Positions 47,671 through 48,271 of a stretch of 64,000 bases of DNA are shown here, piece after piece. A program made the position numbers and the translations under genes. Every line of letters begins with the position of its first letter. The stretch's first letter is position 1. Origin of the DNA: Gracilinanus agilis (Eukaryota); assembly GCF_016433145.1 (NCBI RefSeq), contig NC_058132.1, positions 200,895,413 to 200,959,412 on the forward strand. The letters are read 5' to 3'. The notes under the pieces were generated by a model. That model was not told the DNA's origin, searched no databases, and was given only the letters and a program-made list of their open reading frames with translations.

Positions 47671-48271
47671 TTAGCTGGTCAAGGACTTCCGGGTTTCCTC
47701 CAGGAAGGTCAGAATATCGGTTTTGGCTTTCTGGGAAATAGGGTCAGCACTTCTTTTGAGATCCTCCAGGATGGGGGAGAATTTTTCCTTCAAGGCTCTG
47801 AGCTGCTCGCTTATCTTAGCTTGATATTCAGCGGGAGAGGGCAAACCTTTCTCCCGGAGCTCCTGAATCTTCTGGCTCACGCTGGTCTTGATCTGCTCAT
47901 GGTAAGGCCTCACAAATTCCTGAACGGTTTCTATGTGGCCCTGGGCCCGATCTCGAATATCCTTGCCTATGGGGGTCAGCTTCTCGTGGAGCTCGTCGAA
48001 CTTCTGCTTGGCGCTGTCCTTCAGATCCTGGGTCAGCGGGCCTACCCTCTGGCGGAAATTCTCTACATCCGAGGCCCACTTCTTCTGAAATTCTTCCAGG
48101 TGGGGATCAATACTCTTCTTGACTCCTTCCAAGCCCTTTGACATCTCCTCCCGTAGCTCAGCGGTTTCCTTAATTATGGTGTCCTTGATTTCCTGGTAGG
48201 AAGGGTTAATCTCTTCATAGAAGGCATCCAAGGCTGCTTTCAGGGAAGTCATTGTTTCTGAAATCTTCAGG
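47671..48271 (-). CDS. APOA1: Apolipoprotein A-I exon 4 coding part
   Basis: Acceptor ctcctctctgcag|. LKISET...KETAELREEMSK...FQKKW...AEYQAK aligns without gaps to human residues 44-242. TAA at 47671-73. Joined CDS 43+148+601=792 nt (263 aa). Confidence 0.96.

What the first reader, a model, noticed from the sequence alone, without database searches (positions are those of the whole stretch)
47881..47955. ApoA-I has Gln at two of the three LCAT-activating arginines and Ser at the Milano position
The gap-free alignment gives helix 6 PIGKDIRDRAQGHIETVQEFVR: R149 is kept (47953-55), R153 is Q (47941-43) and R160 is Q (47920-22). R173 is S (47881-83) and R123 is T. R149/R153/R160 are established as critical for LCAT activation and human variants at 160 and 173 cause low HDL. 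Either opossum ApoA-I is a weak LCAT activator or LCAT has co-evolved.
Basis: partly seen in the sequence, partly recalled or inferred. Interest (0 to 1): 0.7.

Follow-up and report, generated by a model that had tools for sequence, protein, structure and literature searches.

The report
ApoA-I missing two LCAT-activating arginines
The gene is otherwise intact and expressed, so it offers a modest natural test of how that activation works.

Summary
Window 47671-48271 (minus strand) is the last exon of APOA1, lying in the usual APOA5-APOA4-APOC3-APOA1 cluster. It aligns to human ApoA-I without a gap, with exon residue i matching human mature residue i+43.

- **Residues:** R149 is kept (CGA, 47953-55). 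R153 is Gln (CAG, 47941-43), R160 is Gln (CAG, 47920-22), R173 is Ser (AGC, 47881-83) and R123 is Thr.
- **Not an artefact:** a spliced mRNA contig from a public run of the same species matches all of 47500-48271 letter for letter.
- **Relatives:** two related species splice at the same junction. The closer one shows no listed difference at these codons, but that table was truncated.

- Ser at the "Milano" position is ordinary. Mouse ApoA-I also has Ser there, and the Milano phenotype comes from the gained Cys.
- The choice "weak activator or co-evolved LCAT" leaves out a third option. Helix 6 keeps four acidic and four basic residues and is more amphipathic, and it has new basic residues (K146, R164) on the same face as the lost arginines.
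- Loss of arginine charge is common across the exon (6 of 14 human arginines), so two of three is about the background rate.

Function cannot be settled with these tools. No LCAT sequence and no marsupial or outgroup ApoA-I sequences were reachable. The scan has not noted this before on other DNA.

The parts
50099..50163 (-). APOA1 exon 2: 5'UTR tail, ATG at 50139-50141, signal peptide MRAAVFIFSLLLVT + first base of a Gly codon; donor GT at 50097-98
   Evidence: read directly; ORF listed; inferred by analogy with human exon structure
49632..49779 (-). APOA1 exon 3: end of signal/pro-segment (GSQA SHLWQ) and mature N-terminus [14 protein letters not shown]...; ends in AA of a split Asn codon
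   Evidence: matches residues 1-40 of mouse and human ApoA-I, E 3e-9 to 9e-9; its last 27 letters are joined to 48271 in the mRNA contig of X20
47671..48271 (-). APOA1 exon 4, coding part (stop TAA 47671-73): helices 2-10, human mature residues 44-242
47908..47973 (-). Helix 6 (human 143-164): PIGKDIRDRAQGHIETVQEFVR
47953..47955 (-). R149 kept (CGA)
47941..47943 (-). R153 -> Gln (CAG)
   Evidence: identical in mRNA contig X20
47920..47922 (-). R160 -> Gln (CAG)
   Evidence: identical in mRNA contig X20
47881..47883 (-). R173 (Milano position) -> Ser (AGC); mouse ApoA-I also has Ser here
47962..47964 (-). E146 -> Lys (AAG): new basic residue on the face of the lost arginines; breaks the acid-at-4 / Arg-at-7 pair of helix 6
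   Evidence: model in PMC11161081
47908..47910 (-). A164 -> Arg (AGG): new basic residue at the same angular position as residue 153; Lys (AAG) in the two related species
47914..47919 (-). T161 -> Glu (GAA) and H162 -> Phe (TTT); human H162Q lowers LCAT activity
   Evidence: PMC4709926
48031..48033 (-). R123 -> Thr (ACC)
47231..47236 (-). AATAAA, probable poly(A) signal of a ~460-nt 3'UTR (inferred)
   Evidence: the X20 contig runs 312 nt beyond 47500

Best explanation
This is the true, intact and expressed APOA1 orthologue of the animal. In its lineage, the second half of helix 6 and helix 7 have diverged strongly from the human sequence. R153 and R160 are fixed as Gln; each CAG is one G-to-A change from a CGG Arg codon. 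The helix has been rebalanced rather than degraded. It still has four acidic and four basic residues and a larger hydrophobic moment. Three basic side chains (K146, R149, R164) still lie on the side where human ApoA-I has R149, R153 and R160. The residues that current models place against LCAT (R149, D150, R151), and the hydrophobic or structural positions whose human variants impair LCAT activation (156, 159, P165, Y166), are kept or conservatively replaced. I infer that this ApoA-I still activates its own species' LCAT. On this reading the 'three arginines' rule depends on the human sequence context, acting through the E146-R149 / D150-R153 / D157-R160 salt-bridge ladder, and is not a universal contact requirement. 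Shown: the sequence, its expression as spliced mRNA, gene identity and synteny, and the charge and geometry figures. Inferred: that the redistribution compensates and that activation is retained.
For: Gene identity: PF01442 at E 6.8e-48; best and gap-free match to human ApoA-I at E 1e-43 to 2e-45, against 1e-22 for ApoA-IV. Neighbours are ApoA-IV (E 1.2e-94), an ApoA-V-like PF01442 ORF and Apo-CIII PF05778. Expression: the spliced X20 contig has 0 differences, and two related species splice at the same 48271 junction. Geometry: acid/basic counts are 4/4 in both species; the hydrophobic moment is 0.52 against 0.34 in human. Measured from the hydrophobic face, window K146, R149 and R164 lie at about +160, +100 and +150 degrees; human R149, R153 and R160 lie at about +111, +151 and +131 degrees. 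Position 164 is basic in the two relatives as well (AGG to AAG, Lys). Published models contact D150/R151 (PMC7859856) or E146/R149 (PMC11161081), not R153/R160. PMC11161081 suggests the R-to-Q losses act through intrahelical salt bridges. A 2025 study found R153A costs 30 to >50% of activity, not 90% (PMC12049944). Charge loss at arginines is general in this protein, 6 of 14.
Against: There are no functional data of any kind. The new basic residues sit at the two ends of the helix, so residues 152-163 carry no positive charge on that face. Intrahelical i/i+3,4 ion pairs drop from 5 to 3. E146K puts a Lys where the PMC11161081 model has an acid binding LCAT K238, and D4K lowered occupancy in their peptide screen. 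H162F changes another position where a human variant (H162Q) lowers LCAT activity. Only one close relative could be read at these codons, and only by the absence of a row in a truncated table. No outgroup sequence was available to polarise the change.
Confidence: 0.55

Rival explanations
1. LCAT has co-evolved. The enzyme of this lineage carries matching changes on the surface that meets ApoA-I helices 4-7 (lid loop 227-247, membrane-binding-domain loop 61-75, alphaA-alphaA' loop), so the pair works but cross-species pairs would not. This does not exclude the best explanation.
For: Several positions tied to LCAT are changed together: E146K, R153Q, R160Q, H162F and R123T. E146-K238 and R123-D335 contacts appear in published simulations; a Lys at 146 would repel LCAT K238 unless that side also changed. 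The helix 6 second half (1 of 11 identical to human) and helix 7 (5 of 22) are the least conserved part of the exon, while helices 4 and 5 stay at 11 of 22 (counted).
Against: LCAT is not in the window, and no LCAT sequence of this genome could be reached. Published models disagree on the interface, and none places R153 or R160 on LCAT.
Confidence: 0.2
2. This ApoA-I is a genuinely weaker LCAT activator. Esterification in this lineage is lower, or leans on other activators such as ApoA-IV, ApoE or ApoC-I.
For: The same R-to-Q changes in human ApoA-I each cut Vmax to about 10%. The ion-pair ladder of helix 6 is reduced from 5 to 3 pairs. The arginine triad evolves at the background rate here, so it shows no special constraint (one search counts). 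An intact APOA4 lies 20 kb away.
Against: The gene is intact and expressed, and in a relative it is covered extremely deeply. The amphipathic design and the Pro punctuation at 99/121/143/165/209/220 are kept. No physiological data on HDL esters in this animal were found in the library.
Confidence: 0.2
3. Artefact: an assembly error, a private allele, a pseudogene, or a paralogue beside a canonical copy elsewhere.
For: Only one study (P9) holds the stretch at about 100%. The large run X19 laid nothing, which the tool attributes to a filter.
Against: The independent spliced mRNA contig is identical over 772 letters. The reading frame is open, splice sites are canonical, and the gene sits in orthologous synteny. 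Run X20 laid only one contig on the stretch at 80% likeness or better, so it shows no second copy. Relative A shows no listed change at these codons at a depth around 1e5.
Confidence: 0.02

Closest known systems
Human apolipoprotein A-I (for example PDB 3k2s, 1av1)
   Same: Gap-free alignment over residues 45-240. Same exon structure, the same Pro-punctuated 22/11-mer repeats and the same gene cluster. R149, D150, R151, H155, P165 and Y166 are kept.
   Different: R153Q, R160Q, E146K, T161E, H162F, A164R, R173S and R123T. Helix 6 is 7 of 22 identical and helix 7 is 5 of 22.
Engineered human ApoA-I R153Q and R160Q (Roosbeek et al. 2001, J Lipid Res 42:31; known here only through PMC11161081 and PMC6962161)
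   Same: The same residue changes at the same positions.
   Different: Those are single changes in the human background, each with Vmax about 10%. Here both occur together with K146, E161, F162 and R164, and the LCAT partner is unknown.
ApoA-I Oslo (R160L) and ApoA-I Milano (R173C)
   Same: The same positions have lost Arg.
   Different: Oslo puts a hydrophobic residue there. Milano's phenotype is ascribed to Cys-mediated dimers (PMC4709926). The window has polar Gln and Ser and no Cys, and mouse also has Ser at 173.
ApoA-IV 22-mer repeats (PDB 3s84)
   Same: The 30-residue piece 157-186 scores better against ApoA-IV repeats (E 2.6e-7) than against ApoA-I (E 0.2-0.5). Repeats such as SLQASLRPHADELK have Gln at the position matching 160 and Arg at the position matching 164.
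   Different: The score is summed over several repeats. There is no nucleotide similarity to the window's own APOA4 (best 46/90), so this is convergence or drift within the repeat family, not gene conversion.

Membership tests
Apolipoprotein A-I (APOA1 orthologue) | Apolipoprotein A1/A4/E domain above Pfam's gathering score | tested here: met
   PF01442, 163.3 bits against a cut-off of 90, E 6.8e-48
Apolipoprotein A-I (APOA1 orthologue) | Closer to ApoA-I than to ApoA-IV or ApoE, collinear over the whole exon | tested here: met
   ApoA-I chains E 1e-43 to 2e-45 in one gap-free stretch; ApoA-IV 1.5e-22; ApoE 2e-5
Apolipoprotein A-I (APOA1 orthologue) | Position in the APOA5-APOA4-APOC3-APOA1 cluster, with APOC3 on the opposite strand | tested here: met
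   ORFs at 6.7 kb (-), 27.2 kb (-), 42.9 kb (+) and 47.7 kb (-); ApoA-IV E 1.2e-94; PF01442 and Apo-CIII PF05778
Apolipoprotein A-I (APOA1 orthologue) | Signal peptide plus pro-segment exons, spliced to a large last exon; expressed | tested here: met
   Exons read; N-terminus matches mouse and human residues 1-40; exon 3|4 junction seen in contigs of three species
Apolipoprotein A-I (APOA1 orthologue) | Pro-punctuated amphipathic 22/11-mer repeats | tested here: met
   Pro at 99, 121, 143, 165, 187, 209 and 220; helix 6 hydrophobic moment 0.52
ApoA-I with the canonical LCAT-activating helix 6 | Arg at 149, 153 and 160 ('three conserved arginines') | tested here: not met
   Only R149 is present; 153 and 160 are Gln
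ApoA-I with the canonical LCAT-activating helix 6 | Acid at repeat position 4 with Arg/Gln at position 7 in helices 4, 6 and 7 (DE4-QR7 motif of PMC11161081) | tested here: not met
   Helix 4 has E4-Q7 (met), helix 6 has K4-R7 and helix 7 has E4-K7
ApoA-I with the canonical LCAT-activating helix 6 | Activates LCAT on HDL | not testable with these tools
   Needs reconstituted HDL and enzyme assays
ApoA-I Milano-like variant | Cys at 173 that allows disulfide dimers | tested here: not met
   AGC = Ser; exon 4 encodes no Cys

The most novel reading that the evidence does not exclude
In this marsupial lineage the ApoA-I/LCAT activation interface has been rebuilt. The helix-6 arginine/acid ladder that human ApoA-I needs is gone. 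Activation would then depend on a co-adapted LCAT surface, or would have moved to another element such as helix 4, which keeps its E4-Q7 motif, or ApoA-IV. The homologous pair would work while the human/marsupial cross pairs fail. That would give a natural pair of swap partners for mapping the still-disputed LCAT-ApoA-I interface.
Probability: 0.2. Interest if true: 0.55.

Novelty: new variant of a known kind. Interest (0 to 1): 0.35.

Why it matters
How ApoA-I activates LCAT is still unsettled. Recent papers propose different binding sites and disagree on whether the helix-6 arginines touch the enzyme or only shape the helix. A natural, expressed ApoA-I carries the two R-to-Q changes that cripple the human protein, together with a defined small set of accompanying changes (K146, E161, F162, R164). 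This gives a ready list of back- and forward-mutations for testing whether the arginine requirement depends on context. The gene itself is ordinary, and the Milano-position part has no special meaning.

Tried and rejected
1. The word-based protein search with exon 4 returned no hit at E<=1e-10. The collection appears to hold no vertebrate ApoA-I, so I could not align other marsupial, monotreme or sauropsid sequences.
2. I did not run the big representative search. The operators reserve it for proteins left open or for claims resting on absence, and neither applies here.
3. Bashtovyy et al. 2011, the ApoA-I conservation study, is not held. PMC6854765 has no supplements held; it says only that opossum ApoA-I sits oddly in its tree.
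4. Gene conversion from APOA4 was prompted and rejected. blastn of APOA1 exon 4 against the window's APOA4 and APOA5 exons gives only noise (E>0.1), and the best ungapped match of the 90-nt piece is 46/90.
5. Run X19, the large run of the same study, laid no contig; the tool warns that a filter can cause this.
6. The variant table hides 53 rows. The codons of relative B at 153/160 are therefore unknown, and those of relative A are inferred only from the absence of a row at a depth around 1e5.
7. Searches for opossum HDL or LCAT physiology, and for species preference of LCAT, found nothing usable. No paper in the library links marsupials to LCAT activation.
8. The scan's own notes hold nothing on LCAT.

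Full report
**What is there.** The finding lies in the last exon of a four-exon gene on the minus strand.
- Exon 2 is 50099-50163, with the ATG at 50139-50141. Exon 3 is 49632-49779.
- Exon 4 starts at 48271 and its stop codon is at 47671-47673.
- The in-frame part of exon 4 (window:47674-48270:-, 199 aa) matches Pfam PF01442 at E 6.8e-48.
- It matches human ApoA-I chains in the PDB at E 1e-43 to 2e-45. ApoA-IV scores 1.5e-22 and ApoE 2e-5.
- Exon 3 matches residues 1-40 of mouse and human ApoA-I.
- The neighbours are an ApoA-V-like ORF (6709-7683, -), APOA4 (27241-28173, -; E 1.2e-94 to human ApoA-IV) and APOC3 (about 42.9 kb, +; PF05778). This is the orthologous APOA1 locus.
- I did not verify the taxon.

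**The observation.** The alignment to the full-length human chain 3k2s_A is one stretch, query 2-197 on chain 45-240. The offset of 43 is constant, so there is no gap. A script read the codons.

| Human position | Window residue | Codon | Coordinates |
|---|---|---|---|
| R123 | Thr | ACC | 48031-33 |
| E146 | Lys | AAG | 47962-64 |
| R149 | Arg | CGA | 47953-55 |
| R151 | Arg | CGG | 47947-49 |
| R153 | Gln | CAG | 47941-43 |
| R160 | Gln | CAG | 47920-22 |
| T161 | Glu | GAA | 47917-19 |
| H162 | Phe | TTT | 47914-16 |
| A164 | Arg | AGG | 47908-10 |
| R173 | Ser | AGC | 47881-83 |

R171 and R177 are both Lys.

**Is it real DNA and real mRNA?**
- Four runs of one study (organism C) hold about 100% of the stretch's words.
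- A 1111-nt contig of run X20 lies on 47500-48271 with no other letter. It then continues with the reverse complement of GTTTGAAGCCTCTGAGATGGGCCAAAA, the end of exon 3. This is a spliced transcript carrying the same codons, and it fixes the exon 3|4 junction as AA|C (Asn).
- Runs of two other organisms also lie on the exon and splice at the same place, each with its own exon-3 sequence. Organism A has many studies and very deep coverage. Organism B gave one 1517-nt contig with 79 other letters over 769. Both are related species.
- Inside 47881-47955, only two differences are listed for A and B. One is 47905, a synonymous change in P165. The other is 47909, AGG to AAG, so residue 164 is Lys: still basic.
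- The table hides 53 rows. The rows shown fit a ranking by depth: all rows with high depth in A, then rows seen only in B, in positional order up to 47809.
- On that reading A has no fixed difference at the 149, 153, 160 or 173 codons, where its depth is about 1e5. This is an inference. B is unknown at those codons.
- An assembly error, pseudogene or private error is effectively excluded.

**Is it more than chance?** On the alignment, the exon-4 region of human ApoA-I has 14 arginines.
- Four are kept in the window: R83, R116, R149 and R151.
- Four become Lys: R131, R171, R177 and R215.
- Six lose the charge: R61Y, R123T, R153Q, R160Q, R173S and R188S.

Two uncharged out of three is what this background rate predicts (P about 0.4). 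The pattern is interesting only because of what is known about these sites in human ApoA-I. Turned around, it shows that the triad is under no visible special constraint in this lineage.

Identity to human, counted by eye on the alignment, is uneven.

| Helix | Identical to human |
|---|---|
| 4 | 11 of 22 |
| 5 | 11 of 22 |
| 6 | 7 of 22 (in 154-164, only H155) |
| 7 | 5 of 22 |
| 8 | 10 of 22 |

PMC12049944 describes helices 4 and 6 as highly conserved among mammals and helix 5 as poorly conserved. Here the order of helices 5 and 6 is reversed.

**What is known about the sites.**
- PMC6962161 "three conserved arginines ... critical for LCAT activation".
- PMC11161081 summarises Roosbeek et al. 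2001. Helix 6 holds three acid/arginine pairs (E146-R149, D150-R153, D157-R160). Changing any of the arginines to glutamine drops Vmax to about 10%, and removing an acid drops it to about 50%. The authors suggest the loss comes from disturbed helix-stabilising salt bridges rather than lost contacts.
- In their simulations helix 6 binds LCAT through R149-D73 and E146-K238.
- PMC7859856 finds contacts of D150, R151, D103, K118 and R123, among others.
- PMC12049944 finds R153A, V156E and L159K reduce activity by 30 to >50%, and R151A by about 10%.
- No model puts R160 on the enzyme.
- R160L (Oslo), H162Q (Kurume), V156E, L159R/P and Y166F impair LCAT or lower HDL, and P165R is associated with low HDL. 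R173C (Milano) acts through its Cys and disulfide dimers. R171Q is harmless.
- Mouse ApoA-I keeps R149/R151/R153 (the stretch SPVAEEFRDRMRTHVDSL shown). It has Ser at the Milano position (QLAPHSEQMRESLAQRLAELKS aligned to FVRPYHEQIKTSVSQKIQELRE).

S173 is therefore ordinary.

**Anatomy of the changed helix.** The 22-residue human helix was copied from the output.
- Both helices have four acidic and four basic residues. Human has E146, E147, D150, D157 and R149, R151, R153, R160. The window has D147, D150, E157, E161 and K146, R149, R151, R164.
- The hydrophobic moment is 0.34 in human and 0.52 in the window.
- At 100 degrees per residue, and measured from the centre of the hydrophobic face, human R149, R153 and R160 lie at +111, +151 and +131 degrees.
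- Window R149, R164 and K146 lie at +99, +159 and +159 degrees. With 11/3 periodicity, residue 164 has the same angle as residue 153.
- Three basic side chains therefore remain on the same side, but two have moved to the ends of the helix. Residues 152-163 carry none on that face.
- Possible i/i+3,4 ion pairs fall from five to three.
- The positions kept or conservatively replaced are R149, D150, R151, H155, I156, V159, P165 and Y166.
- The acid-at-4 / Arg-or-Gln-at-7 motif of PMC11161081 survives in helix 4 (E-Q). It does not survive in helix 6 (K-R) or helix 7 (E-K).

**Explanation.**
- **Most likely (about 0.55).** These are real, fixed, lineage-specific substitutions in a working ApoA-I, and the charges of helix 6 have been redistributed. 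The human three-arginine requirement reflects the human salt-bridge ladder and is not a universal contact. The compensation itself is inferred from geometry and not shown.
- **Co-evolved LCAT surface (0.2).** This is not exclusive of the first. E146K and R123T are the changes that would most call for it.
- **Weaker activator (0.2).** Esterification would be lower or would lean on other apolipoproteins.
- **Artefact (0.02).**

I could not reach an LCAT sequence, other marsupial ApoA-I sequences or an outgroup. From memory only, and untested here, chicken ApoA-I also has the three arginines. That would make Gln the derived state.

**A side lead that failed.** The 30-residue piece 157-186 scores better against human ApoA-IV repeats (E 2.6e-7) than against ApoA-I. 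Some ApoA-IV repeats have Gln and Arg at the positions matching 160 and 164. The window's own APOA4 and APOA5 show no nucleotide similarity to APOA1 exon 4, so gene conversion is rejected. The score is a sum over repeats.

**Novelty and verdict.**
- The gene is the known APOA1 orthologue.
- Within what I could search, the natural R153Q/R160Q pair and its accompanying changes are not described. No paper in the library links marsupials with LCAT activation, but the main conservation study could not be read.
- I file it as a new variant of a known kind, with interest 0.35. It is useful as a natural mutagenesis guide for an open mechanistic question, but it is not surprising in itself for a fast-evolving protein about 50% identical to the human one.
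- The sibling note s1-198870, on loss of Trp and Met residues in the same protein, agrees with this picture of protein-wide divergence. W8V, W72K, M112V and M148I are visible.

Noticed in passing
window 47188-47670 (minus strand): The APOA1 3'UTR appears to be about 460 nt long. There is an AATAAA at 47231-47236, and the X20 mRNA contig runs 312 nt past 47500. From memory, the human 3'UTR is far shorter.
   Followed up: partly
window 48272-49631: Intron 3 is 1.36 kb. It holds an (AAT)n(GAT)n microsatellite at about 48501-48533 and a SINE-like stretch at about 48330-48490.
   Followed up: no
window 48144-48222: In related organism A this patch (human residues about 60-86) has 18 other letters in 112 nt and loose ends at 48147 and 48163, while the rest of the exon differs by about 3%. 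It could be an indel or a fast-evolving segment of helix 2/3.
   Followed up: no
window 47842-48039: Against human, helix 5 (11 of 22 identical) is better kept than helix 6 (7 of 22) and helix 7 (5 of 22). This reverses the eutherian pattern described in PMC12049944.
   Followed up: partly
window 47833-47841: Pro at 187 and 189 (GLPSPAEY) where human has GGARLAEY, giving a double-proline start to helix 8.
   Followed up: no
window 47842-47931: The 30-residue piece 157-186 scores better against ApoA-IV repeats than against ApoA-I in the PDB search. Gene conversion from the window's APOA4 was tested and rejected.
   Followed up: yes
runs X1-X22: Only one study holds the stretch at about 100%. 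A much more widely sequenced organism A is about 3-6% different. The window's species is therefore probably not the most-studied member of its group.
   Followed up: no
window about 26.4-26.8 kb and about 55.4-56.1 kb: Runs of N flanked by microsatellites (TA/GA-type repeats).
   Followed up: no
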